A DNA stretch of 64,000 bases from Haliotis rubra (taxonomy: Eukaryota): the NCBI RefSeq assembly GCF_003918875.1, contig NW_025766981.1:558001-622000 (forward strand), in the 5' to 3' direction. The notes below the pieces were generated by a model. It searched no databases, was not told the origin of the DNA, and worked only from the letters and a program-made list of their open reading frames with translations. Of the stretch, positions 3,230 through 57,400 are shown in pieces (positions within the stretch are counted from its first letter, which is position 1; the number at the start of each line of letters is the position of its first letter). The position numbers and the translations under genes were made by a program.

Positions 3230-4604
3230 ATGGAGGACGCACCACTACTCCCGTCCAAAGAGGAAGGAAGCCGTAATGGAGAGAAATCCAACGTCAAGAA
3301 CCTCCTTTTCCTGAATGGTGTGATGTTCATATTGACGGTGTCAGGCAACCTGTTCATGCCTGTCATGAGTCAGTATTTGTACCATCGAGTATCGGAGGAT
3401 GTGTTCAACCATACATTGGTCAACACCTCAACAACACAGCCGTGTTACCGGAACAAGACAGACCCCGATTACATGCTCCAGGAAAAGGCCCAGCAAGTCA
3501 CCGCGGAGAAACAAATGCAGTTCACGATGTTGAGAAGCGCCCTGGCTATCCTCAGTAATATCATGCTGGGTGCTTATTCCGATTCCATTGGTAGAAAATT
3601 CCTGTTTGTGGCCCCTATGACCGGGCAGCTGATAAGATCCGCTTTCGTGTCTGTTATCATCAGATATAGGCTTGACTTGAACTTTCTCTTCTTGTCCGAA
3701 GGGATAGATGGTCTCCTAGGAAGCTATTACGGAATCTTGCTTGCGTCCTATACATTCACCGCCGACAACACCCCCGCAACGGGGTCCCGCACCATCGGCA
3801 TCGCCGTTGTCGACCTCACCGAATTCTTCGCCACCTCCCTGGTCTCAATAGCCAGTGGGTATTTCATCCAGGATGTGAATTTCTTCTACCCGGCTCTCAC
3901 TGCCACGCTGGTGTGTTTGGTGGCTCTTTTAATTGTCATACTGTTCCTCCCGACAAGCAGATATGCTAGCGAGAGAAGATGGATGGGTCCAGTGGAAGGA
4001 CTTAAAAGAGTGTTTGGATTTTATGTTCTCGATAACACCACCTTAAAGAAAGCGTGCTTCATCCTTATTTTGCTTACTTTTGTGTTTAACGTCATCAGTG
4101 CTTTAGGAGGCTCCAGCATCAACACATTGTTTCTCCTGAATGCGCCCTTTTGCTGGACTCCCGAAAAACTGGCATATTACGTGACAGCCTTCACAGTGTT
4201 ATGTCCCTTAATAGGTGTACCCTTAACCAGGTTGTTCCAGGTGTGCCTGATAGACGAGATCATTGCCGTCATAGCGACATCAGCAGCCGTCGCAAGTGAT
4301 GTCATACACTCGTTTGCGTCGACGGATGTCACCATGTATATAGGTAAGTGCCTCTTGTAATCATGGGGGCGGTGGGGTAGCCTAGTGGTTAAAGCGTTCG
4401 CTCGTCACCCGGGTTCGATTCCCTACATGGGTACAATGAGGTCCACTTCTGGTGTCCCCCGCCGTGATATTGCTGTAATATTGTTAAAAGCGGCGTAAAA
4501 CTAAAAAAGAAGAAAATCTCATAATGATTGTAATCATGGCTATATTTTTGTTACGACTTTGAAAATGTTTCATAAACTAAGCGTCTAATGTCATCGCATT
4601 GATC

Positions 4605-4641
<37 letters not shown>

Positions 4642-7600
4642 CAGTTGTAGGTGTGTCCTCAATCGGTAGCACTTTGTCCAGTATTACCCGAGCCATCATG
4701 TCCCGCATGGCACCACCCGACAGGCAAGGTAAGTTATACCACGTACCCGTTTGAAGGTTCGGGTTAGAATTGGTCTTTGGCAACCCATGCTTGTCGTAAG
4801 AGGCGACTAACGCTATGGCTATGGGGTGGTCAGGCTTGCTGATTTTTTCTTGACGCATGTCATCGTATCCCAAGAGCGTAACTGATGCTTACGATGTCGA
4901 TCACTGGATAGCCATTGTCAGACTCGATTATTCGCTGGAATACTGTAGAGTACGGCTTTAAACAACATAGAAAACGAAACAAAGTTTCGCAACGAGTTGG
5001 CTTGTGTTTTCTTTGCGTCCTTAGGTTCACAGCGAGATATGATCAACAAAGTAGGCACGAATATAAAGAAATATAAACGTTCAAATCTCAGTTTCGAGTT
5101 GAACACATCTTCAGGAAAGTAAATCAAATGTGTACCTTTGTTGCATGTTCCGATATCGCCTCTGTAGATGTACTACTGGTAGATGTTCCGATATCACCTG
5201 TCTAGATGTACTACTGGTACATGTTCCGATATCGCCTCTGTAGATGTACTACTGGTACATGTTCAAATATTGCCTGTGTAGATGAACTACTGGTACATAT
5301 TCCTATATCGCCTGTGTAGATGAATTACTGGTATATGTTCTGATATCGCCTCTGTAGATGTACTACTGGTACATGCTCCGATATCGCCTGTGTTGCTGTA
5401 CTACTGGTAGATGTTCCGATATCACCTGTCTAGATGTACTACTGGTACATGTTCCGATATCACCTGTGTAGATGTACCACTGGTACATGTTCCAATATCG
5501 CCTGTGTAGATGAATTACTGGTATATGTTCCGATATCGCCTCTATAGATGTACTACTGATACATGCTCCGATATCGCCTGTGTAGATGTACTACTGGTAC
5601 ATATTCCTATATCGCCTGTGTAGATGTACTACTGGTACATGTTCCGATATCAACTGTGTAGATGTACCACTGGTACATGTTCCAATATCGCCTGTGTAGC
5701 CCTACAACTGGTACATATTCCGATATCGCCTGTGTAGATATACTACTGGTACATGTTCCGATATCACCTGTGTAGATGTACAACTGGTACATGTTCCAAT
5801 ATCGCCTGTGTAGATGATCTACTGATACATGTTCCTATAGCGCCTGTGTAGATGTACAACTGGTACATGTTCCGATATCGCCTGTGTTGCTGTACTACTA
5901 GCACATGTTCCGATATCGCCTGTGTAGATATACTACTGATACATGCTCCGATATCGCCTCTGTAGATGTTCTACTAATACATGCTCCGATATCACCTGTG
6001 TAGATGTACTTCTTGTACATGTTCCGATATCGCCTGTGTAGATGTACTACAGATACATGCTCCGATATCGCCTGTGTTGCTGTACTACTGATACATGCTC
6101 CGATATCACCTGTGTAGATGTACTTCTTGTACATGTTCCGATATCGCCTCTGTAGATGTACTACTTGTACACGTTCCCATATCGCCTGTGTTGCTGTACT
6201 ACTGGTGAGTGAGTGAGTGAGTTAATATTTAACGTCACATCGGCAATATTTCAGCCATATCGTGACGAGAACATTCGATATTGAAATGAAATATATGTAT
6301 ATTATAATGTACTACTGGTACATGTTCCGATAACGCCTGTGTTGCTGTACTACTGGCACATGTTCCGATATCACCTGTGTAGCTGTACTACTGGCATATG
6401 TTCCGATATCACCTGTGTAGCTGTACTACTGGCACATGTTCCGATATCACCTGTGTAGCTGTACTACTGGCATATGTTCCGATATCACCTGTGTTGCTGT
6501 ACTACTGGCATATGTTCCGATATCGCCTGTGTTGCTGTACTACTGGTACATGTTCCGATATCACCTGTGTAGCTGTACTACTGGCACATGTTCCGATATC
6601 GCCTGTGTAGCTGTACTACTGGCATATGTTCCAATATCACCTGTGGTGCTGTACTACTGGCATATATTCCGATATCGCCTGTGTTGCTGTACTACTGGTA
6701 CATGTTCCAATATCACCTGTGTAGCTGTACTACTGGCACATGTTCCGATATCGCCTGTGTAGATGTACTACTGGCACATGTTCCGATATCGCCTGTGTAG
6801 ATGTACTACTGGTACATGTTCCGATATCGCCTGTGTTGCTGTACTACTGGTACATGTTCCGATATCACCTGTGTAGCTGTACTACTGGCACATGTTCCGA
6901 TATCACCTGTGTAGCTGTACTACTGGCATATGTTCCGATATCACCTGTGTTGCTGTACTACTGGCATATGTTCCGATATCGCCTGTGTTGCTGTACTACT
7001 GGTACATGTTCCGATATCACCTGTGTAGCTGTACTACTGGCACATGTTCCGATATCACCTGTGTAGCTGTACTACTGGCATATGTTCCAATATCACCTGT
7101 GGTGCTGTACTACTGGCATATGTTCCGATATCGCCTGTGTTGATATCGTTCCGATATCACCTGTGTTGCTGTACTACTGGCACATGTTCCGATATCACCT
7201 GTGTAGCTGTACTACTGGCACATGTTCCGATATCACCCGTGTAGCTGTACTACTGGGTACGATATCGCCTGGTACATGTTCCGATATCATAGCGCCTGTG
7301 TAGCTGTACTACCATGTTCCGATATCACCTGTGTAGCTGTACTACTGGATACATGTTCCGATATCGCCTGTGTAGCTGTACTACTGGCATATGTTCCGAT
7401 ATCACCTGTGTTGCTGTACTACTGGCATATGTTCCGATATCGCCTGTGTTGCTGTACTACTGGTACATGTTCCGATATCACCTGTGTAGCTGTACTACTG
7501 GCACATGTTCCGATATCACCTGTGTAGCTGTACTACTGGCATATGTTCCGATATCGCCTGTGTAGATGTACTACTGATACATGCTCCGATAGCGCCTGTG

Positions 7601-10600
7601 TTGCTGTACTACTGGTACATGTTCCGATATCACCTGTGTAGCTGTACTACTGGTATATGTTCCTATATCGCCTGTGTAGATGTACTACTGGTACATGCTC
7701 CGATATCATCTGTGTAGCTGTACTACTGGTATATGTTCCTATATCGCCTGTGTAGATGATCTACTGATACATGTTCCGATATCGCCTGTGTAGATGTACT
7801 ACTGGTACATGTTCCGATATCGCCTGTGTTGCTGTACTACTGGTACATGTTCCGATATCACCTGTGTAGATATACTACTGGTACATGCTCCGATATCGCC
7901 TGTGTAAATGTACTACTGGTACATGTTCCGATATCACTTGTGTAGATGATCTACTGATACATGTTCCTATAGCGCCTGTGTAGATGTACAACTGGTACAT
8001 GTTCCGATATCACCTGTGTAGATGATCTACTGATACATGTTCCTATATCGCCTGTGTAGATGTACTACTGGTACATGTTCCGATATCGCCTGTGTTGCTG
8101 TACTACTGGTACATGTTCCGATATCACCTGTGTAGATATACTACTGGTACATGCTCCGATATCGCCTGTGTAAATGTACTACTGGTACATGTTCCGATAT
8201 CGCCCGTGTAGATGTAGTACTGGTACATGTTCCGATATCGCCCGTGTAGATGTACCACTGGTACATGTTCCGATATCGCCCGTGTAGATGTAGTACTGGT
8301 ACATGTTCCGATATCGCCCGTGTAGATGAACTACTCGTACATGTTCCGATATCGCCCGTGTAGATGTACTACTGGCACATGTTCCGATATCGCCTGTGTA
8401 GATGTACTACTGATACATGCTCTGATATCGCCTCTGTAGATGAACTACTGGTACATGTTCCGATATCGCCTGTGTAGATGTACTATCGGTACATGTTCCG
8501 ATATAGCCTGTGTAGATGTACTACTGGTCGTGTTCCGATATCGCCTGTGTAGCTGTACTATCGGTACATGTTCGCATATCGCCTGTGTAGATGTACTCCT
8601 GGTACATGTTCCGATATTGCCTGTGTAGATGTACCACTGGTACATGTTCCCATATCGCCTGTGTAGCTGTACCACTGGTACATGTTCCGATATACAATTG
8701 TGTAGATGTACTACTGGTACATGTTCCAATATCGCCTGTGTAGCTGTACTACTGGTACATGTTCCGATATCGCCTGTGTAGCTGTACTACTTGGATATGT
8801 TCCGATATCGCCTGTGTAGATGTTCCGATACATAGTACATGTTCCCTGTTTGCAAGAGTGCAAGTTCGCCAGTATAAATATATAGAGGATACTAAAAGAC
8901 CCTTCCATGTAACACCAATTTCATTAAACGAGTAAATGATTTGGTATCTAACGAGCGAAAGCGAGTTTGGTGCTAAATATTTAACGAGTTTGATAGAAAT
9001 GGTATTTAAGCGAGTTTAGTATTATGGGTATTACTCTCCAACATAAATTGATAGAAACTGCCTACAGTGTGATGACTCTCATGTCAATTTTCCGCGAGTC
9101 AAGCAGGGTCTAATACCATTGCGACAGAGGCATTTGCATTGTTAGGTCATAACTGTAACCATTATGACGTCGTATGTCTAGCGAAATTACACTAGTGTAA
9201 TATTGCCGTAAAAATATTACACTGCAGTATCTTCCACGGGCAGCAATAAATTGCTATTACAGGGTGCCTGTATCGCTTTACTATTGTTAGATGGTTAATT
9301 TTCTCCAGGTGTGCTGTTACACTACTTTTGTTAAAGGTCCATTATTCGATGTACAGCTGCACTATCTTTCGAGGGTCACTGCTTTCCACTTCCTTTGTTG
9401 TATTGTGACAGCGTTATGATTGTACTATTGTTCCCTGTTCGCTGTTCCAGTGCAGCTTTTTTACAGAGTAACTTACCAATTGAAGAGCTGCTCCAATGTT
9501 AGAGGTTCAATATTACAGCTGCACTTTTGGTTTGTGTCCTAGGCCCTTTCGTCAGTGTACTATTGTTACATGTTTACTATTCTCCAGTATATCTTATAAG
9601 TTGTTCACTGTTCACGAGGAGGGCATTGGTTGATGTACCCTCGGTGTTTGTTAAATGTTCCCTGAGCCCGAAGGGCGAGGGGAACATAAACAAACATCGA
9701 GGGAATATCAACCCATGGGCCCTGAGAGGCCAGTGAACAATGTATTTATCTTACCGAACACATTAATGTTAATTTTGAATTGTTTGAAGCACGGGTACAA
9801 ATCTTTGTGTAGCCATCGATAGATTTTGCTGACAAGAAAAACAGATTTAGAGTTATCCCCCTTCCATCGATTTGCATTCGCAAAACATCGGTAATTTCCG
9901 TACATCATTCGTGATTCAATGTAATTCGAGATAAAGAACTACTAGCACGAAGTACCAAATGAGTTGCCATTGACAGCGGGGTACATTGAAATGTTACTCG
10001 CTTGTAAGAGCGCTCAGCCAATCAGAAAGCGACATTTATGTGTGAGGTAAGATAAGTACTATTGTTACAGATTCACCATTCTCCAGTATACCTGTACGGG
10101 TGTTACATGTTCACTATTCTCCAGTGTACCTGTACTATTGTTACAGGTTCACCATTCTCTATTGTTACAGGTTTACTATTCTCCAGGACGGCTGTACATT
10201 TGTTACATGCTGGCTATTCTCCATTATACCTAGCTTTTTTGTTACAGGTTCACTGTTCGCCAGTATCGCGGTAATGGAGACAATCTGCTCGCTGGTTGGA
10301 ACTCCTTTATTCAGCAACATCTACCAGAGCACTGTTGTCATGTGGAGAGGACTCGTCTTCATCGTCATGGCGGGAATGCACGTCGTTGCTGCCGTCATAC
10401 TCGTGTAAGTATCTCAGAACTGCAGACATGACTGACATTACACTATACATTCTCATAACTTTGTTTGTTTGTTGTTTAAATCCGCACTCAGCAATGAACC
10501 AGCCATGAGGCGTCTGTAAATAATTAGATCTGGACGACATAATCAAGTGATCAATATCATGAGCATCGATCTAAGCAATTGGGATACGATGACATATGTC

Positions 10601-11300
10601 AACCAAGTGAGCGAGCCTGACCACCCGATCCCGTGAATGGGATGGGTTGCTGAAGACCAATTCTAACCCGGATCCTCACGGGTCGCTGAGAACATTGATT
10701 GACGCCACTTAGCAATACAGCAGCCATCCGCTGAAAGACCCGTGAAGATCCGGGGTAGAATAAGTCTTCAGCAACCCATGCTTGCCACAAAAGGCGACTA
10801 TATGCTTGTCGTAAGAGGCGACTAACGGGATCGGGTGGTCAGGCTCGCTGACTTGGTTGACATATGTCATCGGTTCCCAATTGCGCAAATCGATGCTCCT
10901 GCTGTTGATCACTTGATTGTCTGGTCCAGACTCGATTATTTACAGACCGCCGCCATATAGCTGGAATATTGCTGAATGCGGCGTAAAACTAAACTCACTC
11001 ACTCACTCACTATCCACTGAGATGTCATGCATGGCTCTTGATTTATGAACACAAGCGTAAAACATCGTTTCAAATGAAGCGACACAATCAGCTATTTAAA
11101 ATGTTGCTAATAAATACTGTGAGTATATGGTTTCGGGATCAAGAATCAAACAAAGCTGATCTTAAATGATGATATATAGAAATACAACACATGACTGTTA
11201 TCATCTCTCCAGGATATTCATCTTCGTATCACGCCCAGTGAGGGAGGAACATAAGAGGATGAAGTCGTTGAATGTTCAGGAGGAGGACGCGAGGAGCTAG
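3230..11300 (+). CDS. SLC46-family MFS transporter, paralog 1 (~480 aa); exons 3230-4343, 4645-4728, 10248-10404, 11213-11300
   Basis: ATG in caacATGg context. MFS motif A (LGAYSDSIGRK), ADNTP..RT, PFCWTPE and RAIMSRMAPPDRQG|SLFASIAVMETIC are SLC46-like. All GT-AG junctions join in frame (1443 nt) to TAG at 11298-11300. Confidence 0.9.
4367..4527 (+). mobile_element. tRNA-derived SINE (family A) in gene 1 intron 1
   Basis: A/B boxes; TSD ttgtaatcatgg at 4355-4366 and 4528-4539. Confidence 0.88.
4611..4637. repeat. (TA)n microsatellite abutting the gene 1 exon 2 acceptor
   Basis: Directly visible. Confidence 0.95.
4745..4983 (+). mobile_element. Family B SINE in gene 1 intron 2
   Basis: Consensus match including gtcgtaagaggcgactaa. 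Confidence 0.8.
5131..8856. repeat. 38-bp satellite (~90-95 units), consensus TGTACTACTGGTACATGTTCCGATATCGCCTGTGTAGA/C, in gene 1 intron 2
   Basis: Directly visible head-to-tail units with no spacers; interrupted by a ~100-bp insertion at ~6207-6307. Confidence 0.97.
6207..6307 (-). mobile_element. 5'-truncated retroposon tail (family C) inserted in the satellite
   Basis: (GAGT)n tail plus ttaatatttaacgtcacatcggcaatatttcagccatatcgtga, flanked by duplicated tgtactactggt. Confidence 0.7.
8880..9250. mobile_element. Hairpin-bearing non-autonomous DNA element (Crypton-like, tentative)
   Basis: Imperfect palindrome centred on aacgagcgaaagcgagtt; second hairpin gtgtaatatt..aatattacac near the end. 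Confidence 0.45.
9250..10247. repeat. Degenerate ~38-bp repeats (tgtactattgttacaggttcactattctccagtatacc) at ~9250-9600 and 10056-10247, running into the exon 3 acceptor
   Basis: Recurrent actattgttaca(g/t)gtt(c/t)actattctccag motifs. Confidence 0.75.
9597..10055. mobile_element. Hairpin-bearing non-autonomous DNA element (Crypton-like, tentative)
   Basis: ~140-bp imperfect palindrome at 9601-9740 centred on gagcccgaagggcgag; inverted ttatcttacc / ggtaagataa; cagccaatcagaa near the end. Confidence 0.6.
10461..10684 (-). mobile_element. Family B SINE in gene 1 intron 3
   Basis: Reverse-complement consensus match. Confidence 0.85.
10738..11011 (+). mobile_element. Family B SINE in gene 1 intron 3 (subfamily with duplicated hairpin)
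   Basis: Full-length consensus match with (CACT)n tail. Confidence 0.9.
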
Positions 11301-17091: not shown

Positions 17092-18924
17092 TATATACAC
17101 GATGTATTAATATATCTTCACTCACACACAATACTTGAGGCAATGTGAAGGTTGCCTGTCGGATGTCACATGCTCATTGTTTGGTCTCGCTATCTCAGTG
17201 TGTTATCTCAAGCCACTGTAGCACACTGGTGAATGTTGTGTCATATTTTTTCAATAGGATTGCCCATGTGATGTTATATCATGTGATGGAATTTGTGAGG
17301 ATATCTACAGTAGTGGACTGAGCACTACATAACATACAACATGGAAACAGAACCGCTCCTGCCAAAAAGGGGAGGATTCTCCTGAATCTGGAGATCGGAA
17401 ATCTCATGTGAAGAATCTCCTCTTTGGAAATATGATATTATTCATGTTGGTTACAGGGGGAATGATGTACATGCAAGTGATGAGCCAGTATGTCTACAAA
17501 CGGGTGACAGAGGACTTGTTTCGTAATCAAACTCTGGCGGGAAAAGGCCCAATGAATCAAACATGTTACCTGAACACGTCAAACCCAGACTACATCCTTC
17601 AGGAGAAGGCACAGCAGATCGCCGCAGACAAACAAATGCAGTTCACCATTGTAAAAAGTAGTCTAGCCATCGTCATTAACATTATGCTTGGTGCCTACTC
17701 AGACTCTGTTGGTCGTAAGCTCCTCTTTGCAGCACCTCTGACTGGTCAGTTTTTGAAATTCGGAATTTCATCAGTCATTATGTACTGGAACTTGGATATC
17801 AATTTGTTTTTTGTAGCAGAAGGTATAGGCGGAATAACAGGAGGCTATTTCGCTTTTCTGATTGCATCGTATGCCTATGCTGCTGACAACACCCCAGCAA
17901 CAGGTGCGCGAACCATGGGCATAGCCTTCGTGGAGTTCTTTTGAGAACATAGGAGCTGCTGCCTCAGCCACAGCAACAGGCTACTTCATCCAAGACGTGA
18001 ACTTCTTCTACCCGACACTCACTGCCACGCTGATCGTTCTTCTGGATCTTATATTGGTGGTGACTCTACTGCCAGAGAGAAAGAGACCTAAAAGAGCAAA
18101 GAGCAAATGGATTACACCTCTAGAAGGATGTCGACGAGTCTTCGGATTTTATGTTTTGGAAGGTAGTATACGGAAGCGAATATGCTTCGTATTAGCTATC
18201 TTGATATTCGTTTTTACAGCCTTGCCAGCCGTTGGGTCATCTAATATTGACATCCTTTTTAAACTGAACCTTCCATTTTGCTGGACCCCAGAGAAAATAG
18301 GTTACTACAGTACAATCGGCTCTGTAGCACAACAGGTGATCGGTGTTCCGTTGACGCGACTGTTACAGTGTTGCTGTATCGATGAGGTGATCGGAGTGAT
18401 TGATTTACTGGCGATGGGAGCAGCAGAAGGCCTACAGTCAATTGCAAGCACAGACTGGATGATGTATGGGCGTAAGTACATTGTGAAATATGACCGACAA
18501 ATATATCATTCTGAGGACCTGTGATTTTGATTAAATGTAATCCGGTTCTACTTTTGGCACACTGATATTTAATTAATTATGGATGGCATTTTAAATGGAC
18601 GAGTTTGTAATCATATATGCTGAAAATTGATGAAAAGATGTTATTTCCCCGGAATAGCCCAAATCCATTATTATTGAAACTCTTCAGTACAAATTATGTT
18701 TCTCTTTTAAAGATTAATATACTACCTTGGCTCTGACACATAAAAACGCTCAATAGTTCGAATTATAGAGTTGTTTTTTATTCATAACACTAATGTTAGT
18801 ATCATGTTCTTCCAGTTGCCGGCATCAAGATCCCTGCTGCCACAATGTTCCCAATCGTCCGCTCCATCATGTCCCGGTTAGCTCCAGCTAACAAGCAAGG
18901 TCAGTACGTATATGGAGAATGTTC

Positions 18925-24653: not shown

Positions 24654-27600
24654 ATGGAAACAGAACCGCTCCTGCAAAAGGTGGAGGAGTCCGCGGAATC
24701 TGGAGTCAAGAAATCTCAAATCAAGAATCTCCTCTTAGGAAATATGATATTGTTCATATCAACACTTGCGGTGTCGATGTTTTCGCCAGCGATGAGCCAG
24801 TATCTCTACAAACGGGTGACAGAGGACGAGTTTCGCAATCAAACTCTTGCAGGGAAAGGCCCAATGAATCAAACATGTTACCTGAACACGTCAAACCCAG
24901 ACTACATCCTTCAGGAGAAGGCACAGCAGGTCACCGCAGACAAACAAATGCAGTTCACATTTTTGAGAACTAGTCTTGCCATCGTCAGTAACATCATGCT
25001 TGGTTCCTACTCAGACTCTGTTGGGCGTAAGCTCCTCTTTGTCGTACCACTCACTGGTCACTGTTTGAGATTTGGATTGACGGCAGTCATTATGTACTGG
25101 AACTTGGATATCAACTGGTTTTTTCTTCCAGAAGGTTTAGAAGGGATATCAGGGACCTATTACGCTATGCTCCTTGCATCGTTTGCCTATACTGCTGACA
25201 ACACCCCAGCAACAGGTGCTCGAACCATGGGCATAGCCTTCGTGGAGTTCTTTAAGAGCATAGGATCTGCTGCCTCAGAAACGGCAACAGGCTACTTCAT
25301 CCAAGACGTGAACTTCTTCTACCCGACACTCACTGCCACGCTGATCGTTCTCGTGGACATTCTCCTAGTGGTGACACTACTGCCAGAGAGAAATGGGATT
25401 AAAAAGGCAAAGAGCAAATGGATAACACCTCTAGAAGGATGTCGACGAGTGTTCGGATTTTATGTTTTAGAGGGCACTAAGCGAAAGAGATTGTGTTTCG
25501 TATTAGCTATCTTGATATTCGTTTTTACAGCCTTGCCAACCGTTGGGTCATCTAATATTGACACACTTTTCAAACTGAACCTTCCATTTTGCTGGACACC
25601 AGAGAAAATAGGTTACTACAGTACAATCAGCTCTGTAGCACAACAAGTGATCGGGGTTCCGTTGACGCGACTGTTACAGTGTTGCTGTATTGATGAGGTG
25701 ATCGGAGTGATTGGTTCAGTGGCCATAGGCTTAGCAGACAGTCTTCAGTCCATTGTAAGCAAAGACTGGATGATGTATGGGCGTAAGTACATCGTAAAAT
25801 ATTGTCATTTCATTTTTCCTTGGGACCGGTGATTTTGTCTGATAATAATCCGGTTTCACTTTCGGTACCAGAAAATGTTCATTTGTCTCCGCTCAGACCA
25901 GGTCATGTTCCATTATTGTTGAAAATAGTCTGTGCGGATCTTTCCAAAATAAAATAATAACTGAACATTGACACACCAAACCGCTAAAAATAAGTTTTAA
26001 TTTTTTTTTAATTCATTTCTTATCTTGCGTGTGATTTTACGACTTCGTTAGAATTTCAGTGTTCTTTCAGTTGCGGGCATCAAGACTCCTTCTGCCACGC
26101 TGTTTCCAGTAGTTCGCTCAACCATGTCAAAGATGGCACCGGCTAACAAGCAAGGTCAGAACGCATAGAAGGAAAAGTGCACGTATCATGTATTATGTCA
26201 AATGACGCTCCTTTTCTCAGTCTAGGAAATATCCGTTGCCTTTGTCAAGAATAAGTAAGAAGACATATATTGTACAGATAGGTGTACAGATAAGCCTGCA
26301 TACTTGGACAATGTACTAACAATATCCTGTAACAATTCAAATCAAGTAGAAGCTACTCCTTCACTCAGTCCAGGAAATAACAGTTACCCCCTGTCAAGAA
26401 TACGTAGCCTTTGCGTCTGTCAAGAATAAGTAAGACGACATATATTGTAGGCGCACAGTAATCCCGCATACTTGGAGAATGTAGTAACAATATCCTGTAA
26501 CAATTCAAATGAAGTAGCAGCTACTCCTTCACCCAGACTAGGAAATAACAGCTAGCTGTCAGGAATAGGGAGCCATTGCCTCTGTCAAAAATAGGTAAGA
26601 AGACATATATTGTAGGTGCACAGTAAGCCCGCATACTTGGAGAATGTAGTAACAATATCCTATAACAATTCAAATGAAGTAGCAGCTACTCCTTCACCCA
26701 GACTAGGAAATAACAGTTAGCTGTCAGGAATAGGGAGCCATTGCCTCTGTCAAAAATAGGTAAGAGGACATATACTGTAGGTGCTCAGTAAGCCCGCATA
26801 CTTTTAAGAATGTACTGAAAGTATCATGTCAAATGAAGCTCCTTCAATCAGTCCAGGAAATAACCATTGCCTCGGTCAAGAATAAGTAACCGCTTCCTCT
26901 GTAAGGAATTAGTAAGAAGACATTGAGGTTTACTGGAGAATGTACTGACAATATCCTGTAACAATGCAAATGAAGTAGCAGCTGCTCCTTCACTCAGTCC
27001 AGGAAATAACACTTACCTGTCCAAAATAAGTAACTATTGCCTCTGTCAAGAATAGGTCAGAAGACATGCATTATAGGTGCACAGTAAGCAAACATATATG
27101 GGGAATGTACTGAAAATAGCATGTAACATTGTCAAATGAAGCTCCTTCAATCAGTCCAAGAAATAACCATTGCCTCGGTCAAGAATATTACCGCTACCTC
27201 TGTCAGGAAGACATTTTATGTTTACTGTAAGCAAGCATACATGTTCTGTTGTTCATATTTGAAACGTATATGCTCATCGTATAATCAACCCGTGTAGACT
27301 CGGATGGGATGAGTTTCCTCCCACTTGTTTGCTTACATTGGATAACCTTTTCTCGGTATACTGGCACATTGTATGTTCATGTTCCCGGCAGCTTCAGTCG
27401 AGGCATGAGGAAGTTAATTATGTGCCTTAGCATTCCAACCTATTTTCAGGCCACTCTGAAGCACTAAGAGAACGTCGTTCTGATAAAAAGCGCAGTCCTT
27501 TATAAAGCTGTACCATTGTTGCAGGTTCCCTGTTTGCCAGTTTAGCTGTGGTGGAGACCATGTGCTCGTTGGTGGGGACTTCTGTCTTTAATGGCATCTA

Positions 27601-28750
27601 CCAGGCCACGGTGGTGGTTTGGAGAGGTATGGTGTTCATCGTCTTGGGAGGCACATATATCGTCGCTGCTATTCTTCTTGTGTGAGTATTTAATGCACGT
27701 CTTTCTCAAGTCATTTCCGTTTTAAAACAAAATATATTCCTCGTTCTGATGGTAAGGTGATGAAGTATTTTAAGCATATAACGGTATTTCAACATGTGGA
27801 AATTCGTGATTAGAAACTGGGCTGGTTGGAAAAGGCGTCCACATTGGATTATCAGTCTTTCCATTGTGCGTCAGCGATCTCCCAAAGTTGTGATTAGGTA
27901 CTCACAACATCAATCACTTGATTGTCTGACCCAGATTTTACACGCTGCCTTGGAATATAGTACAACATGTGCTAATTGTTTGCACATGGCAATAGTTTAT
28001 CTACTGCAGGTAGGTAATTCATCACATAGCCTTCAAGCTGTATGGCCCGTGAAGATCTGGGTTAGAATTGATCTTCGTAAGAGGCGACTAATGGGATCGG
28101 GTGGTCAGGCTCGCTGACTTGGTTGACACGTCATCGTATCCCATTTGCGTAGAACGATGCTCATGCTGTTGGTCACTGTATTGTCCGGTCCAGACTCAAT
28201 TATTTACAGACTGCTGTCATATAGCTTGAATATTGCTGAGTGCGGCGTAAAACTAAACCCACTCACTCCAGCTGTGTGTGTGTTCTTTACCTATCATTAT
28301 ATTTTCTGTGAAAATATCATCACCTATATGTTCCACGTGGGTAATCCTAAAAAGGATGTAATTGTCACGCCGAGTCTTTGTTTCAGGGTATATATATTCG
28401 TGTCCAAACCGATCAGGTTGAAGCGAGATGTTCTGAAGGTTCAGCGCGATGTTCAGCAGGCTCAGCCTGAGGTTCCACATGTTCAGCGCGATGTTCAGCA
28501 GGATCAGCCTGAGGTTCCACATGTTCAGCGCGATGTTCAGCAGGATCAGCCTGGGGTTCCACATGTTCAGCGCGTGGTTACAGTGCATCAAGGGACTCAG
28601 ACTGACATAACCGTTGATCCAGACAAGCACGTGCATGCGCTGTCGGCGACAGACCTAGAAGTGGCGGAGGTCACCCGGGCCAGCATACACGTGCATGCTC
28701 AGTCAGAGTTTGGCGAAGAGGATGGAGACAATGTGAAAACAGACGGGTAG
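24654..28750 (+). CDS. SLC46-family MFS transporter, paralog 3 (~577 aa); exons 24654-25782, 26071-26154, 27525-27681, 28387-28750
   Basis: Open exon 1 (LGSYSDSVGRK, PFCWTPE), canonical GT-AG junctions, 1734 nt in frame. Confidence 0.92.
26195..27240. repeat. ~140-170-bp minisatellite, ~7 copies, gene 3 intron 2
   Basis: aaatgaag..ctccttcactcagtccaggaaataac...gcatacttggagaatgtact recurs. Confidence 0.9.
28046..28269 (+). mobile_element. Family B SINE in gene 3 intron 3 (insertion shared with genes 4 and 5)
   Basis: Same flanks as the 40128 and 48616 copies. Confidence 0.88.
28439..28564 (+). repeat. Coding 42-bp x3 repeat (VQRDVQQDQPEVPH) in gene 3 exon 4
   Basis: Three near-identical in-frame units. 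Confidence 0.95.
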
Positions 28751-37326: not shown

Positions 37327-40300
37327 ATGGAAACAGAACCGCTCCTGCAAAAGGTGGAGGAGTCCCCGGAATCTGGAGTCAAGAAATCTCAAATCAAGAA
37401 TCTCCTCTTTGGAAACATGATATTGTTCATATTAACACTTGCGGTGTCGATGTTTTCGCCAGCGATGAGCCAGTATCTCTACAAACGGGTGACAGAGGAC
37501 GTCTTTCGCAATCAAACTCTGGCAGGGAAAGGTCCAATGAATCAAACATGTTACCTGAACACGTCAAACCCAGACTACATCCTTCAGGAGAAGGCACAGC
37601 AGATCGCCGCAGACAAACAAATGCAGTTCACACTTATGAAAAGTAGTCTAGCCATCGTCAGTAACATCATGCTTGGTTCCTACTCGGACTCTGTTGGTCG
37701 CAAGCTCCTCTATGTCATACCACTCACTGGTCACTGCTTGAGATTTGGATTTACAGCAGTCATTATCTACTGGAACTTGGATATCAACTGGTTTTTTCTT
37801 CCAGAAGGTTTAGATGGGATATCGGGGAGCTATTTCGCTTTGCTGCTTGCATCGTATGCTTATGCTGCTGACAATACCCCAGCAACAGGTGCACGAACCA
37901 TGGGCATAGCCTTTGTGGAGTTCTTTGAGAGCATAGGGTCTGCTGCCTCAGCAACAGCAACAGGCTACTTCATCCAAGACGTGAACTTCTTCTACCCGAC
38001 ACTCACTGCCACGCTGATCGTTCTCGTGGACATTCTCCTAGTGGTGACTCTGCTGCCAGAGAGAAATGGGATTAAAAAGGCAAAGAGCAAATGGATTACA
38101 CCTCTAGAAGGATGTCGACGAGTGTTCGGATTTTATGTTTTGGAGGGCACTAAGCGAAAGAGAGTGTGTTTCGTATTAGCTATCTTGATATTCGTTTTCA
38201 CGGCGTTACCAGGCGTAGGGGCGTCTAATATTGACACACTTTTCAAACTGAACCTTCCATTTTGCTGGACACCAGAGAAAATAGGTTACTACAGTACAAT
38301 CAGCTCTGTAGCAAAACAGGTGATCGGTGTTCCGTTGACGCGACTGTTACAGTGTTGCTGTATTGATGAGGTGATCGGAGTGATTGGTTCAGTGGCGATA
38401 GGCTTAGCAGACAGTCTTCAGTCCATTGTAAGCAAAGACTGGATGATGTATGGACGTAAGTACACTGCGTAATATGACTGATCATTTCATTTTTCCTTAG
38501 GACCTATGATTTTGTCTGAATATAATCTGGTTTCACTTTTGGTACACTTACGTATTATTGTTTTCAGGCATATAACCTGCAAATGTTCATCTGTCTCTGC
38601 TTTTACCAGGTCATGTTCCATTATTGTTGAAAATAGTCATTGTAGATCATAATTGTCATTCAAAAGTAAAATAAGAACTGAACATTGACACAACAAAGAG
38701 CTAAAAACAAGATTTTAAAAAGTCTTAATGTATTTTTAATGTGTTTTACGACTTCGTTAGTATATCAATGTTCTTTCAGTTGCGGGCATCAATGTTCCTG
38801 CTGCCACGCTGTTCCCAGTAGTTCGCTCCACATTGTCCAAGCTGGCTCCGGCTAACAAACAAGGTCAGAATGCATAGGAGAACTGCACGTATCATGTATT
38901 ATGCAAATGAAGCTCCTTCACTCAGTCCAGGAAATAACAGTTACCCACTGTCAAGAATACGTAGCCATTGCCTCTATCAAGAATAAGGAAGAAGACATAT
39001 ATTGTAGGAGCACAGTAAGCCCGCATACTTGGAGAATGTACTAACAGTATCCTGTAACAATTCAAATGAAGTAGCAGCTACTCCTTCACCCAGTCCAGGA
39101 AATAACAGCTAGCTGTCAAGAATAGGGAACCATTGCCTCTGTCAAAAATAGGTAAGAAGACATATATTTTAGGTGCACAGTAAGCCCGCATACTTGGAGA
39201 ATGTACTGAAAATATCATGTATCAGTTCCTTCAATCAGACCAGGAAATAACCATCCTCGGTCAAGAATAAGTAAGCCCCTACCTCTGTCAGGAATTATTA
39301 AGAAGACATTTTATGTTTACTGTGAGAAAGCATACCTGTTCTGTTATTCATATATGAAACGTATATGCTCATCGTATAATCAACCCGTGTAGACTCGGAT
39401 GGGATAAGTTTCCTACCACTTGTTTGCTTATTTTGGATCACCTTTTCTCAGGAAGTTAATCTTTGCCACTCTGGTGCACTCTGACTACAGTGTAAGGGAA
39501 CGTAGTTCTGTTTAAATTCGCAGTTCTTTACGTAGGTGTACTATTGTTGCAGGTTCCCTGTTTGCCAGTATAGCGGTGGTGGAGACCATGTGCTCTCTGG
39601 TGGGGACTCCTATCTTCAGCAACATCTATCAGGCCACAGTGGTGGTTTGGAGAGGTATGGTGTTCATCGTCTTGGGAAGCACACATATCGTCGCTGCTAT
39701 TATTCTTGTGTGAGTATTTAATGCACGTCTTTCTCATTACTCTAAATCCACAACCGTTTTGATTTAAAATATATTTCTTATTCGGATGGTCAGCTGATGA
39801 TTGATGTAGAAGATTTTAAGGAAATTACAGTATTTCAACCTGTGGAAATTCGTGTTAAGAATTCATCCCCATGAATCTGTGCTGGTTGAAAGAGGCGTCT
39901 GAAATGGATTTTCAGGCTTGTCAGGCTCGTTTACTTGCTTCATTTTGCGTCATCGATGCCCCAAGCTTGTGGTTAGGTACTCACAACATCAATCGCTTGA
40001 TTGTCTGATCAAGATTTACAGGCTGCCTTGGAATATAGTACAACATGTGCTAATTGTTTGCACATGGCAATAGTTTCTGGCTTCTATTGCTGGTAGGTAA
40101 TTCATCACATAGCTTTCAAGCTGTATGACCCGTGAAGATCATGATTAGAATTGATCTTCAGTAACCCATGCTTGTCGTAAGAGGCAACTAATGGGATCGG
40201 GTAGTCAGGCTCGCTGATTTGGTTGACACATATCAAGGTATCCCAATTGCATAGAACGATGCTCATGCTGTTGATCACTGGATTGTCTGGTCAAGACTCA

Positions 40301-54455: not shown

Positions 54456-57400
54456 ATGAGAGGACACGACGAGAACTCCCGTAGTCGACGCAGGGAGACG
54501 TCCCCGTTGCTGCGAGGTAACGTTCTGAATGAGACAGGCCTTAATGTTCGGAATCTCGTCATAGGTAACGTCGTGGTATGTCTGTATTTCATAGCGACAA
54601 ATTTCCACAATCCCACCATGGACCAGTATCTGTACAGAAGGATGACGGAAGAGGTGTTTGGAAATGTAACCCATCACGAGTCCTTCAATCAGACCTGCTA
54701 TGTAAACAAGACAGATAAACATTATCTTCTTCAGGAGAAGGCTCAGCAGCTGGCATCCAGAAAACAGATGTATTTCACAATGGCCCGAGGTGTATTTGTA
54801 GTCTTGAATATCGTCCTGTTAGGAGCATACTCTGATTTTATTGGTCGGAAAGTGATGTTTATTGTTGCCATGATGGGTTGTATAACCAGGTACTGTACAC
54901 TGACAGCCATCATCTACTGGGAACTCGACTTCAATTATTACTTCATAGGGGAGATTGTATCCGGTATAACCGGATACGACTACTCCTTCCTGTTGGCCAG
55001 TTATGCTTACACCGCCGACAACACACCTCCCAAGAAGACCAGGACTATAGCAATAGCCGTTCTTGAAACAACTCTGAATCTTGCAAATGCTGCCTCCCAA
55101 ATAGCAAGTGGATTCTTTATTCAAAGAACCGGATTCCTCTACCCTTCGTTCACCTCGGTCATATTGATGTTCCTGGCCGCCATGTTTGTTCTTGTGTGTG
55201 TAAAAGAGACCTTGCCCCGAGTAGAAGTGCAACATAAAGACTGTATTGGTCCCTGCAAAAGCATCAAAAGAGTTGTTGGATTTTATCTGTTTGATGATAC
55301 CAAACAGACCCGGTTGCTGTTTATATTGGCATTGTTGACCTACCTGTTCTTCATCTTGCCTTCCAGCAGTGCATCGAACACAGGCACGCTGTATATGCTG
55401 AACAAACCATTCTGCTGGACTCCTGAAACTATTGGGTATTATTCAATGGCGGGCACTGCACTAAAGCAGGTGCTTGGTGTGCCACTTATTAAGGCACTCC
55501 AGTACTGTATCAGTGATGAGATTATAGGAATATCCAGCTCGTTCGTGATGGTTGCAGCATATACACTCCGTGGACTGGCTTACACAGACTGGATGATGTA
55601 TGGGGGTAAGTTGCAGAAGAAACAGCATTTATTACATCATCATCAATCGTTTAATACATTACGTAAATTTAGATCCAACTTGTATGGGTGAGTAGGTCAC
55701 TAGAGGAGTTTCACATAAGGGTCACCTGGTCATAATATGTGATCGTGTGTGTCATCTTACACCGATAGTGTGTGCTGCAGATTAATATGCAATCAAACAC
55801 TGCTGTGCATGATTCAGCTGTCATTCACCCTAGATCTCCGTGATATGGCTGATACATAGATGACCCCGACATAAAGCCAAGATTCACTCACTGCCCCTTA
55901 ATGCAGGCCTTTATAAAGTAAACAGAAACGATAAAACCCTTCCTACGTCTATAAGAAAGCAGTGTCGATTGTACAATTCTGACAATGGGTATGGGATTGT
56001 TTGACGCCAAATTCTGCAGCATTACAGCTGTACGACGTGGTCTGTAAACAATCGAGTCTGGACCAGACAATCCAGTGATCAACAGCATGAGCATCGATCT
56101 ACGTCATTGGGAAACGATAACGTGTCAACCAAGGCAGCGAGCCTGATCCCGTTTATTGCCTCTTAGGACAAGCATGGGTTGCTAAAGACCAAGTCTAACC
56201 CTGATTTGTTTGAGTGGTATTCTAGAAGTTGGTGGTATAGAGATGACAAAACGTTATGGATGATCACCTTCTATATTTTGACAATTTCGGAACATATAGA
56301 TAGATTTTCAAACCATATGCTTGAAAACGGTAAAAAGGTGATCATCCATAGAGTTTTGTCAAGTCTAACCCTGTTTTGCTCAGGTAATCCTAACAGTGCT
56401 GGAAGTGATTTCCTACACTTCCGGTGACTAAATGTTCAGGTTGTGATAAAGGATTGTCTAAATCAGTTGCAGGACTGGAGGCTTTCACGTTTGCGATTTC
56501 CCCGACGGTTCGAGCCATCATGTCCAGAATGTCACCACGAGACAGACAAGGTATTAATCGTTAGACAGTACTAAAGTACAATATTGTTAAGCGTGTCTTT
56601 CTTTGGATCCTATCAAAGACATGGTATTGTGAGTTATATACAAATGCCATCGGTAATGACTTCCCAGAAGCCAATGCTTGTCAGAAGAACCAGGTTTAGT
56701 GAAATTATATAGTTACTCTAGATAACCTTGATTTGGTATTAACAAATCTACTACAGAATTATTCAAATGTGTTCCTGATAAAGAAGGACATTGCTGTGTT
56801 CGGCTCAAATGTAACCCTTTCTGTCAAGTTCACACTTTTATCCAGTTGGTTATAACTTATGTCACATAGTTTCTTGATTATATATTCTGTTATGTTCTCT
56901 CTTGACTATATCTTCTGTCACATTATCTCTTGACTATATCTTCTGCCAGGTTCTCTCTTCACGAGTCTGATGCTAGTCCAAGCTCTGTGTACACTGCTGG
57001 GGACGCCAGTTTTCAGCTCCCTGTACCAGTCCACCGTTCAGGTGATGAGAGGAAGTGTCTATCTAGCCATGGCTGGTCTACAACTGCTCTCTGTCGCCGT
57101 GTTTATGTGAGTACATGGCAAAGGGCTGCCCGAAACCCGTTTCTACTGTTCTATATAAACAACTATAACACAAGCAATAATGGGCTAAACATTGAGACTA
57201 ATAATCTACGGAAAATGCAAGAGGAAACCTGTAATCCATTTCTACGTAGGTGACGAAACAATAATCTTTAGAAATCCCTGGTGAAGGTATGAGCATATGG
57301 CAACAATTTCAGGGTAGTTCTAGTCATCTCTTTCCTTAAGCCGTACCGTTCAGTACAAATACCTTGCTTTTAACATGGATTTCAGCACATGATCATAATG

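What the first reader, a model, noticed from the sequence alone, without database searches (positions are those of the whole stretch)
5131..10270. A 3.7-kb satellite apparently born from the host gene's own exon 3 splice acceptor, with the acceptor AG lost
Seen: the satellite unit TGTACTACTGGTACAT|GTTCCGATATCGCCTGTGTAGC aligns ungapped at 27/38 positions (hand count) with the intron 2/exon 3 junction of paralogs 4 and 5, TGTACTATTGTTGCAG|GTTCCCTGTTTGCCAGTATAGC. Edge units are closer still: the first reads tgtacctttgttgcatgttcc (5131), and the last contains gttccctgtttgc (8841-8853), identical to the first 13 nt of exon 3 in genes 3-5. In gene 3 the hexamer AGCTGT occurs exactly 38 bp apart (27506, 27544) around this junction, a plausible slippage seed. 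Degenerate intermediate units (9250-9600, 10056-10247) connect the array to the real acceptor. In the massively amplified unit the junction CAG is CAT. Inference: this records satellite birth from a splice site, where only a splice-dead variant was tolerated to expand ~90-fold.
Basis: partly seen in the sequence, partly recalled or inferred. Interest (0 to 1): 0.85.

Follow-up and report, generated by a model that had tools for sequence, protein, structure and literature searches.

The report
Splice-junction "mirage" minisatellite in abalone intron
An intron of an abalone transporter gene is filled with about 100 tandem copies of its own intron/exon junction; this kind of repeat is already known, and sister species show that copies keeping the splice signal can expand too.

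Summary
Window 5131-8862 is a 38-bp array of about 94-97 units, found nowhere else in the 1.38-Gb Haliotis rubra assembly. Its unit matches the intron 2/exon 3 junction (16 nt of intron plus 22 nt of exon) of the host SLC46A3-like gene. No clean unit keeps the acceptor AG.

Orthologous introns settle the origin:
- H. asinina has the same AG-less variant (12.5 copies) plus an AG-bearing array next to the exon.
- In H. cracherodii (about 20 units) and H. rufescens (about 60 units), intron 2 is almost entirely junction copies running into exon 3.

The array therefore arose once from the junction, before these lineages split, and then turned over separately in each.

H. rufescens carries at least 40 AG-bearing decoys, and its host gene is under purifying selection (dN/dS about 0.1).

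This is a "mirage" minisatellite, a kind known from amphioxus and mirrored at a donor site in human F7. The scan has already noted it many times on other DNA of this same genome. It is a new member of a known kind. No RNA was available to test splicing.

The parts
3230..4343 (+). Coding exon 1 of the host gene, SLC46A3-like MFS transporter (NCBI protein XP_046575185.1, Haliotis rubra)
   Evidence: 100% tblastn match to P0001 residues 1-371. Donor read from the sequence. The close paralog matches Pfam MFS_1.
4645..4728 (+). Exon 2 (28 codons). Its donor CAAG|GTAAG opens intron 2.
   Evidence: tblastn match to P0001. Splice sites read from the sequence. Donor motif located.
4729..10247 (+). Intron 2 (5519 bp). 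About 3.9 kb of it is 38-bp junction-derived units; the rest is inserted transposons and a SINE-bearing 5' flank.
   Evidence: 104 units covering 3946 bp. The 5' flank and array start align colinearly with H. asinina.
5131..8825 (+). Main 38-bp array, about 93 units of the AG-less variant. It has a central sub-domain and a weak 4-unit higher-order periodicity.
   Evidence: All 68 whole-genome pattern matches (3 mismatches or fewer) fall in this array. It forms one clade with the H. asinina distal array (SH-aLRT 96).
6205..6307 (-). 5'-truncated SINE fragment inserted into one unit, flanked by a 12-bp target-site duplication (6195-6206 and 6308-6319)
   Evidence: Sequence. It is 99-100% identical to more than 40 dispersed genomic copies.
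8826..8862 (+). 3' edge unit. Its exon-derived half keeps the ancestral junction sequence.
   Evidence: A 13/13 match to the exon-3 start of genes 3-5. It scores 28/38 to the junction but 21/38 to the array consensus. In the tree it groups with junction-like units.
8880..9250 (.). Inserted dispersed repeat (transposon), absent from H. asinina
   Evidence: More than 1500 candidate loci, with full-length copies at 85-90% identity. No counterpart in H. asinina.
9277..9593 (+). Old degenerate junction-derived units
   Evidence: Five units scoring 23-30/38 to the junction. Window 9270-9443 is orthologous to H. asinina L033 5551-5696.
9600..10050 (.). Second inserted dispersed repeat (MITE-like, with an inverted-repeat head), absent from H. 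asinina
   Evidence: More than 2400 candidate loci, with full-length copies at 87-93% identity. No counterpart in H. asinina.
10053..10231 (+). Five proximal junction copies abutting the real acceptor. Three keep CAG and so are decoy acceptors.
   Evidence: Use of any of the three decoys would give a premature stop.
10232..10269 (+). The authentic junction: the last 16 nt of intron 2 plus the first 22 nt of exon 3. It is the terminal unit of the array.
   Evidence: Sequence. Protein match.
10248..10404 (+). Exon 3 (157 nt), conserved and under purifying selection
   Evidence: dN 0.017-0.064 against dS 0.26-0.72 between species.
56851..56962 (+). Independent 28-bp junction repeat (3.9 copies) at the exon-3 acceptor of the sixth paralog. 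Not part of the 38-bp family.

Best explanation
This is a junction-spanning ("mirage"-type) intronic minisatellite.

Origin. A 38-bp segment made of the last 16 nt of intron 2 and the first 22 nt of exon 3 was duplicated in tandem. The host is an SLC46A3-like transporter gene. The duplication happened in an ancestor of living Haliotis lineages, after this gene split from its neighbouring paralogs. I infer slippage between short direct repeats (AGC or AGCTGT) that lie 38 bp apart. Only the 3'-most copy is continuous with the rest of exon 3, so it remained the working acceptor.

Turnover. The array has since changed independently in each lineage by unequal exchange or slippage, with homogenisation in the middle and older states kept at the edges. 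A distal variant became a sub-array in the common ancestor of H. rubra and H. asinina. It has AG changed to AT, a weakened pyrimidine tract and a rewritten 5-nt block. It grew to about 93 units in H. rubra. The exon-proximal part decayed and took two transposon insertions.

Effect. I judge the array a tolerated by-product of high minisatellite turnover in abalone introns. The loss of AG in the big array is a hitch-hiking founder mutation, not a precondition for expansion.

Shown: homology, single locus, shared ancestry across species, and purifying selection on the gene. Inferred: the slippage mechanism, neutrality, and correct splicing.
For: - Homology to the junction: the best non-array matches to the unit in the whole window are the four paralog junctions, in phase; z=5.6 against shuffles.
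- Single locus: 68 of 68 genome-wide pattern hits lie in this array, and no close match exists elsewhere.
- H. cracherodii ortholog: about 20 units fill the 752-bp intron 2 and run into exon 3.
- H. rufescens ortholog: about 60 units fill the 2256-bp intron.
- H. asinina ortholog: a distal AG-less array plus a proximal AG-bearing array.
- A Logan genomic contig from a fifth sample (DRR299178) breaks off inside the same array.
- Single origin: units in the species examined mostly keep ATA where the real exon of all four species has ATC, and paralogs 2, 4 and 5 keep ATA.
- Distal units of H. rubra and H. asinina form the only strongly supported clade (SH-aLRT 96). The edge unit 8826 groups with junction-like units.
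- The array's 5' flank is colinear between H. rubra and H. asinina.
- The gaps in the H. rubra array are transposon insertions.
- Gene function is retained: dN/dS 0.10-0.14 in the deeper comparisons, at dS up to 0.69.
- Direct repeats 38 bp apart in gene 3.
- The kind is described in the literature: PMC3087553 and PMC1557585.
Against: - No RNA data were available, so correct use of the last acceptor rests on NCBI gene models and on sequence conservation (one search was blank).
- The slippage seed is seen in a paralog, not in the ancestor itself.
- 38-column trees resolve few branches: 121 of 165 are open.
- Independent origins in the two clades are unlikely but not formally excluded.
- Neutrality of the array is assumed, not tested.
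- Array length in one assembly could be misassembled or polymorphic.
Confidence: 0.85

Rival explanations
1. One reading: junction copies that keep the acceptor AG are harmful decoys, so only a splice-dead (CAT) variant could expand to high copy number.
For: - 0 of 86 clean units in the big array have AG at the junction position.
- The same variant also lost the internal CCAG and weakened the pyrimidine tract.
- The largest array of all (about 93 units) is the AG-less one.
- Almost every AG-bearing decoy would give a premature stop or a frameshift if used.
Against: - H. rufescens carries at least 40 AG-bearing decoys in a 2.2-kb array. They are identical to the real site from at least -38 to +19. 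H. cracherodii carries 13-14.
- In those species the CAT variant is present but stayed the minority.
- H. asinina amplified about 8 homogeneous AG-bearing units next to the exon.
- The host gene is under purifying selection in all of these species.
- The H. rubra unit still carries a TGTGTAG site, so it is not shown to be splice-dead.
- Fixation of one founder mutation by array homogenisation explains the 0 of 86 without any selection.
Confidence: 0.1
2. The unit belongs to a dispersed satellite or transposon-internal repeat family, and its likeness to the junction is secondary.
For: Two other H. rubra arrays give 67-71% array-to-array hits: a 39-bp array on C2222 and a 40-bp array on C602. 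Their unit consensus z-scores are 4.4 and 5.4.
Against: - Those two arrays do not resemble each other or the junction.
- They lie near no SLC46 paralog.
- When each is searched genome-wide, it returns its own different set of 65-71% arrays, and none of these is ours. Such hits are therefore background noise among 40-bp minisatellites.
- The flanks of our array are orthologous unique sequence.
- The array is syntenic in five samples.
Confidence: 0.02
3. The direction is reversed: a pre-existing intronic minisatellite was exonised and supplied the acceptor and the first 22 nt of exon 3.
For: The array and the exon start are homologous, and homology alone gives no direction.
Against: The same exon boundary and the same encoded residues occur in 33 paralogs, of which 29 have no junction repeat upstream and only gene 1 has this 38-bp array. 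The array is confined to the gene-1 ortholog group. The exon part is under purifying selection.
Confidence: 0.02

Closest known systems
"Mirage" minisatellites of amphioxus: Adh3 (Canestro et al. 2002, cited as ref 68 in PMC3087553) and globin genes BflGb6 and BflGb9 (PMC3087553)
   Same: - Tandem repeats whose unit spans an exon-intron boundary; BflGb6 uses the 3' end of an intron plus the 5' part of the next exon.
- Many but not all units keep the AG.
- Copy number is unstable.
- Evolution is concerted inside the cluster, with the edge units left out.
- Regular splicing is reported as undisturbed.
   Different: - The host is a mollusc, not a cephalochordate.
- It is far larger: about 100 units and 3.9 kb here, about 60 in H. 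rufescens, against 3-6 units in BflGb6.
- It is traceable across deeply diverged congeners (dS about 0.65).
- A derived AG-less sub-family dominates in H. rubra.
- No RT-PCR or RNA evidence was available here.
Human F7 intron 7 37-bp VNTR (Borensztajn et al. 2006, PMC1557585)
   Same: A minisatellite of nearly the same period. One end unit spans the exon-intron boundary, so the authentic site is flanked by sequence-identical pseudo-sites that stay silent.
   Different: The F7 repeat duplicates the 5' splice site, with the authentic copy first. Here the 3' splice site is duplicated, with the authentic copy last. F7 has a handful of units and experimental proof of oriented scanning. No experiment exists for this locus.
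Other junction minisatellites already noted by this scan in the same H. rubra genome (for example s1-352085, s1-325291, s1-349449, s1-322297)
   Same: Same genome and same architecture: intron filled with copies of its own junction. One of them also has a 38-bp period.
   Different: Different genes and unrelated unit sequences; my genome-wide searches found no other locus with this unit. This one is among the largest. Its amplified variant has lost AG, and it comes with a five-sample comparative series.

Membership tests
Mirage-type (junction-spanning) intronic minisatellite | The repeat unit is made of the end of an intron plus the start of the adjacent exon | tested here: met
   The unit is 16 nt of intron plus 22 nt of exon. 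It scores 27/38 to the paralog junctions, in phase. Units in H. cracherodii and H. rufescens score 33-34/38.
Mirage-type (junction-spanning) intronic minisatellite | The array is continuous with the authentic junction, which forms its terminal unit | tested here: met
   This is directly so in H. cracherodii, H. rufescens and H. asinina. In H. rubra the proximal units abut the exon. The main array is separated from them only by degenerate units and two transposon insertions.
Mirage-type (junction-spanning) intronic minisatellite | Some but not all units keep the splice dinucleotide | tested here: met
   Units with AG, counting the real acceptor: 4 of 104 in H. rubra, 10 or more of 34 in H. asinina, 14-15 of 20 in H. 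cracherodii, 41 of 60 in H. rufescens.
Mirage-type (junction-spanning) intronic minisatellite | Copy number is unstable, evolution is concerted, and the edge units escape homogenisation | tested here: met
   The orthologous distal array has 12.5 copies in H. asinina against about 93 in H. rubra. Edge units 5131 and 8826 keep ancestral states. Polymorphism within a species could not be tested.
Mirage-type (junction-spanning) intronic minisatellite | Regular splicing is not disturbed | not testable with these tools
   No transcript fragments were found. The only evidence is indirect: intact gene models in four species and dN/dS of about 0.1, including exon 3.
Satellite DNA in the usual sense | Long arrays at many loci or in heterochromatin blocks | tested here: not met
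   One locus of 3.7 kb in 1.38 Gb.
Transposon-derived tandem repeat | The array lies inside a dispersed element, or its flanks are repeated with it | tested here: not met
   No second locus carries the unit. The flanks are orthologous unique sequence plus unrelated SINE and MITE insertions.

The most novel reading that the evidence does not exclude
Abalone 3' splice-site choice may be anchored by position (exon definition from the downstream exon body and donor) so firmly that dozens of sequence-identical decoy acceptors stay silent. In H. rufescens at least 40 decoys are identical to the real site from -38 to +19. That intron would then be a natural 3' counterpart of the human F7 system. A linked idea is that some process aimed at junctions, rather than plain slippage, seeds these arrays in Haliotis. 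In that case the AG-less H. rubra variant would show the end state of decoy inactivation.
Probability: 0.15. Interest if true: 0.6.

Novelty: new member of a known kind. Interest (0 to 1): 0.35.

Why it matters
This locus gives a well-resolved life history of a splice-junction minisatellite. It had one origin, persisted through deep species divergence under purifying selection on the host gene, and expanded in different variants in different lineages. It also corrects an appealing adaptive story, because AG-bearing decoys can reach at least 40 copies. The H. rufescens and H. cracherodii introns, built almost wholly of perfect decoy acceptors, are ready-made material for asking how the 3' splice site is chosen. 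The phenomenon itself is already described, and it is common in this genome.

Tried and rejected
- Dispersed-family origin. The two weak hits (L031 and L032) were followed up and judged background. Control searches with those arrays return equally weak, non-overlapping hits.
- Enrichment of junction repeats in the paralog cluster. 4 of 33 exon-3 junctions carry one, against 4.2% of random window positions under the same criterion. This gives p=0.049 with the ascertained case included and p=0.15 without it, so it is not established.
- Higher-order repeat structure. Only a weak 4-unit signal appears, in the central block.
- Hairpin potential of the derived unit, which has two short palindromes. 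Single-strand DNA fold z-scores are -1.3 to -1.9, against about 0 for junction-type units, so the difference is not significant.
- RNA evidence. A search for short proteins covering exons 2-4 found nothing, and the gene's protein cluster holds no transcript contig.
- Pfam on exon 1 of gene 1 alone gave no hit. The family assignment rests on the paralog's MFS_1 hit and on source names.
Protein comparisons used database proteins by id, and dN/dS was computed exon by exon.
Full report
**What is in the window.** The genome is Haliotis rubra (blacklip abalone). The large ORF at 3230-4343 is 100% identical to the NCBI protein "solute carrier family 46 member 3-like [Haliotis rubra]" (P0001, 480 aa). 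The window is contig C2091:558001-622000 of a 1.38-Gb assembly. It lies inside a tandem cluster of about 40 paralogs of this MFS transporter.

Mapping P0001 onto the window gives this gene structure:

| Feature | Coordinates |
|---|---|
| Exon 1 | 3230-4343 |
| Exon 2 | 4645-4728 |
| Exon 3 | 10248-10404 |
| Last exon | about 11213-11300 |

Intron 2 is 5519 bp long.

**Checking the observation.** TRF reports a 38-bp array at 5144-8823 with 97.7 copies and 85% matches. My segmentation gives 94 units from 5131 to 8862. The 27/38 hand count against genes 4 and 5 is exact.

The match is not chance. I scanned the whole window on both strands in all 38 rotations. All but one of the matches of 25/38 or better outside the array lie at the four paralog junctions, in the same phase, or in degenerate units of the same intron. 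The minus-strand maximum is 23. No shuffle of 300 reaches the observed cyclic alignment score (z=5.6).

The remaining details also hold:
- Unit position 16 is never G in 86 clean units.
- The first unit keeps the ancestral pyrimidine tract.
- The last unit keeps the ancestral exon start.
- AGCTGT lies 38 bp apart in gene 3.

**Is it a dispersed repeat?** No. All 68 genome-wide matches to the unit with three mismatches or fewer fall inside this array. A BLAST-type search found only two other loci, at 67-71% identity: a 39-bp array on C2222 and a 40-bp array on C602. These resemble neither each other nor the junction, and no paralog lies near them. As a control I searched the genome with each of them. 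Each returned its own, different handful of 65-71% arrays, and our array was not among them. Hits at that level are therefore background among the many 40-bp minisatellites of this genome.

An early search also showed that a 103-bp piece inside the array (about 6205-6307) is a 5'-truncated SINE. It is 99-100% identical to dozens of genomic copies and is flanked by a 12-bp target duplication.

**The rest of the intron.** Between the main array and exon 3 lie degenerate units (9277-9593) and five proximal units (10053-10231). Three of the proximal units keep CAG. The two gaps, at least 8880-9250 and 9600-10050, are dispersed transposons with thousands of candidate copies, and both are absent from H. 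asinina. Without them, the stretch from 5131 to the exon is one 38-bp array of mixed age.

**Related species.** This is the decisive evidence. I fetched the orthologous genes through their proteins.

| Species or sample (locus) | Intron 2 | Junction units | Units with AG (real acceptor included) |
|---|---|---|---|
| H. rubra (window) | 5519 bp | 104 | 4 |
| H. asinina (L033) | 2068 bp | 34 | 10 or more |
| H. cracherodii (L034) | 752 bp | about 20 | 14-15 |
| H. rufescens (L035) | 2256 bp | about 60 | 41 |
| Logan contig, run DRR299178 (L036) | incomplete | 3 before the contig ends | not counted |

- H. asinina has the same AG-less variant as a 12.5-copy array, on an orthologous 5' flank. It then has degenerate units and about 12 proximal units, mostly with CAG, running into exon 3.
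- In H. cracherodii, about 715 bp of the intron is junction copies. They begin 36 nt after the donor and end as the real acceptor.
- In H. rufescens, the decoys are identical to the real site from at least -38 to +19.
- The Logan contig is genomic and breaks off inside the same array.

**Single origin and direction.** The unit boundaries are the same in both clades. The units mostly keep ATA where the real exon of all four species has ATC, and paralogs 2, 4 and 5 keep ATA. One origin, before the ATA-to-ATC change in the real exon and before the lineages split, is the simplest account.

The direction is exon to repeat, not the reverse. Thirty-three paralogs share the exon boundary, and only gene 1 has this array.

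In a tree of 223 units, the one strongly supported split unites the 92 H. rubra distal units with the 15 H. asinina distal units (SH-aLRT 96). Edge unit 8826 sits with junction-like units and with the paralog junctions. With only 38 columns, little else is resolved.

The North Pacific species contain a few old central units with CAT and CCTGT that look like relatives of the H. rubra variant. The AG-less state is therefore probably old.

**The host gene works.** All four gene models are intact. Exon 1 has dN/dS 0.10-0.14 in the deeper comparisons, at dS 0.28 (H. rubra against H. asinina) and about 0.65 (against the North Pacific pair). Exon 3, downstream of the array, has dN 0.017-0.064 against dS 0.26-0.72. 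I computed these exon by exon, and I neither built nor searched a joined spliced model.

**The selective story.** Three facts speak against it:
- The AG-bearing unit reached at least 40 copies in H. rufescens. There it outgrew the CAT variant, which is present at 14 of 60 units.
- About 8 homogeneous AG-bearing units sit next to the exon in H. asinina.
- Three AG-bearing decoys sit next to the exon in H. rubra.

Use of nearly any decoy would give a premature stop or a frameshift, so decoys may carry a cost, but that cost has clearly not prevented expansion. The H. rubra unit also still contains a TGTGTAG site, so "splice-dead" is untested. One founder mutation carried along by array homogenisation explains the 0 of 86. 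A weak selective bias cannot be excluded.

[quoted passage not shown] They were found again in amphioxus globin genes. There many units keep AG, splicing appears normal, copy number differs between haplotypes, and edge units escape homogenisation (PMC3087553). Human F7 intron 7 holds a 37-bp VNTR whose first unit spans the donor site, so the real donor is followed by silent pseudo-sites (PMC1557585).

I reached this link through the literature search. The scan's own index then showed 22 earlier notes on mirage minisatellites elsewhere in this same genome. Some of them report enrichment at junctions.

In my small sample, 4 of 33 paralog junctions carry junction repeats of different periods (38, 28, 26 and 66 bp). 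Under the same criterion, 4.2% of random window positions do. That is at best marginal (p=0.049, or 0.15 without the ascertained case).

**Verdict.** The claim that only a dead variant could expand is not supported. This is a large, well-documented new member of a known kind. What remains open is how the last AG is chosen among many identical ones; no RNA data were available to address it.

Noticed in passing
window 56851-56962: The sixth paralog has its own 28-bp junction repeat (3.9 copies: 15 nt of intron plus 13 nt of exon) just before its exon-3 acceptor. The decoy copies have lost the AG. Its period and sequence differ from the 38-bp family, so it is an independent event.
   Followed up: partly
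L062 (G000:C2091:501180-502880, minus strand) and L060 (G000:C2091:508884-510584, minus strand): Two more paralogs carry junction-spanning repeats at the same exon-3 acceptor. One has a 26-bp period with 2.5 copies, all keeping AG. The other has a 66-bp period with 3.9 copies.
   Followed up: partly
L035 6670-6899 (H. rufescens): The decoy acceptors 114 and 228 nt upstream of the real one would add an in-frame, stop-free insert. The local units read TATACC instead of TATAGC, which removes the stop. All other decoys give a stop or a frameshift.
   Followed up: no
window 6195-6319: A very young 5'-truncated SINE copy with a 12-bp target-site duplication sits inside one array unit. That unit has not been amplified since the insertion.
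   Followed up: partly
G000:C2091, about 400-775 kb (window included): There is a tandem cluster of roughly 40 SLC46A3-like MFS transporter genes on one contig. Gene 2 of the window (about 17360-18482) matches in two pieces with an internal TGA and may be broken.
   Followed up: no
window 26236-26803, 38913-39228, 47182-47770: A 165-bp tandem repeat (2-3.6 copies) lies in intron 2 of paralogs 3, 4 and 5. It is unrelated to the 38-bp unit.
   Followed up: no
L034 5470-6589 and L035 7149-7701: The next intron (intron 3) of the H. cracherodii and H. rufescens orthologs carries a separate 51-bp array of 22 and 11 copies.
   Followed up: no
window 5131-8825 (unit consensus): The derived unit gained two short palindromes, TGTAC...GTACA and CGATATCG, that the junction lacks. 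Single-strand folding is only slightly better than shuffles.
   Followed up: partly
window 28414-28579: A 21/42-bp tandem repeat lies in the region of gene 3 that aligns with the C-terminal tail exon of its paralogs. It may lengthen the coding tail.
   Followed up: no
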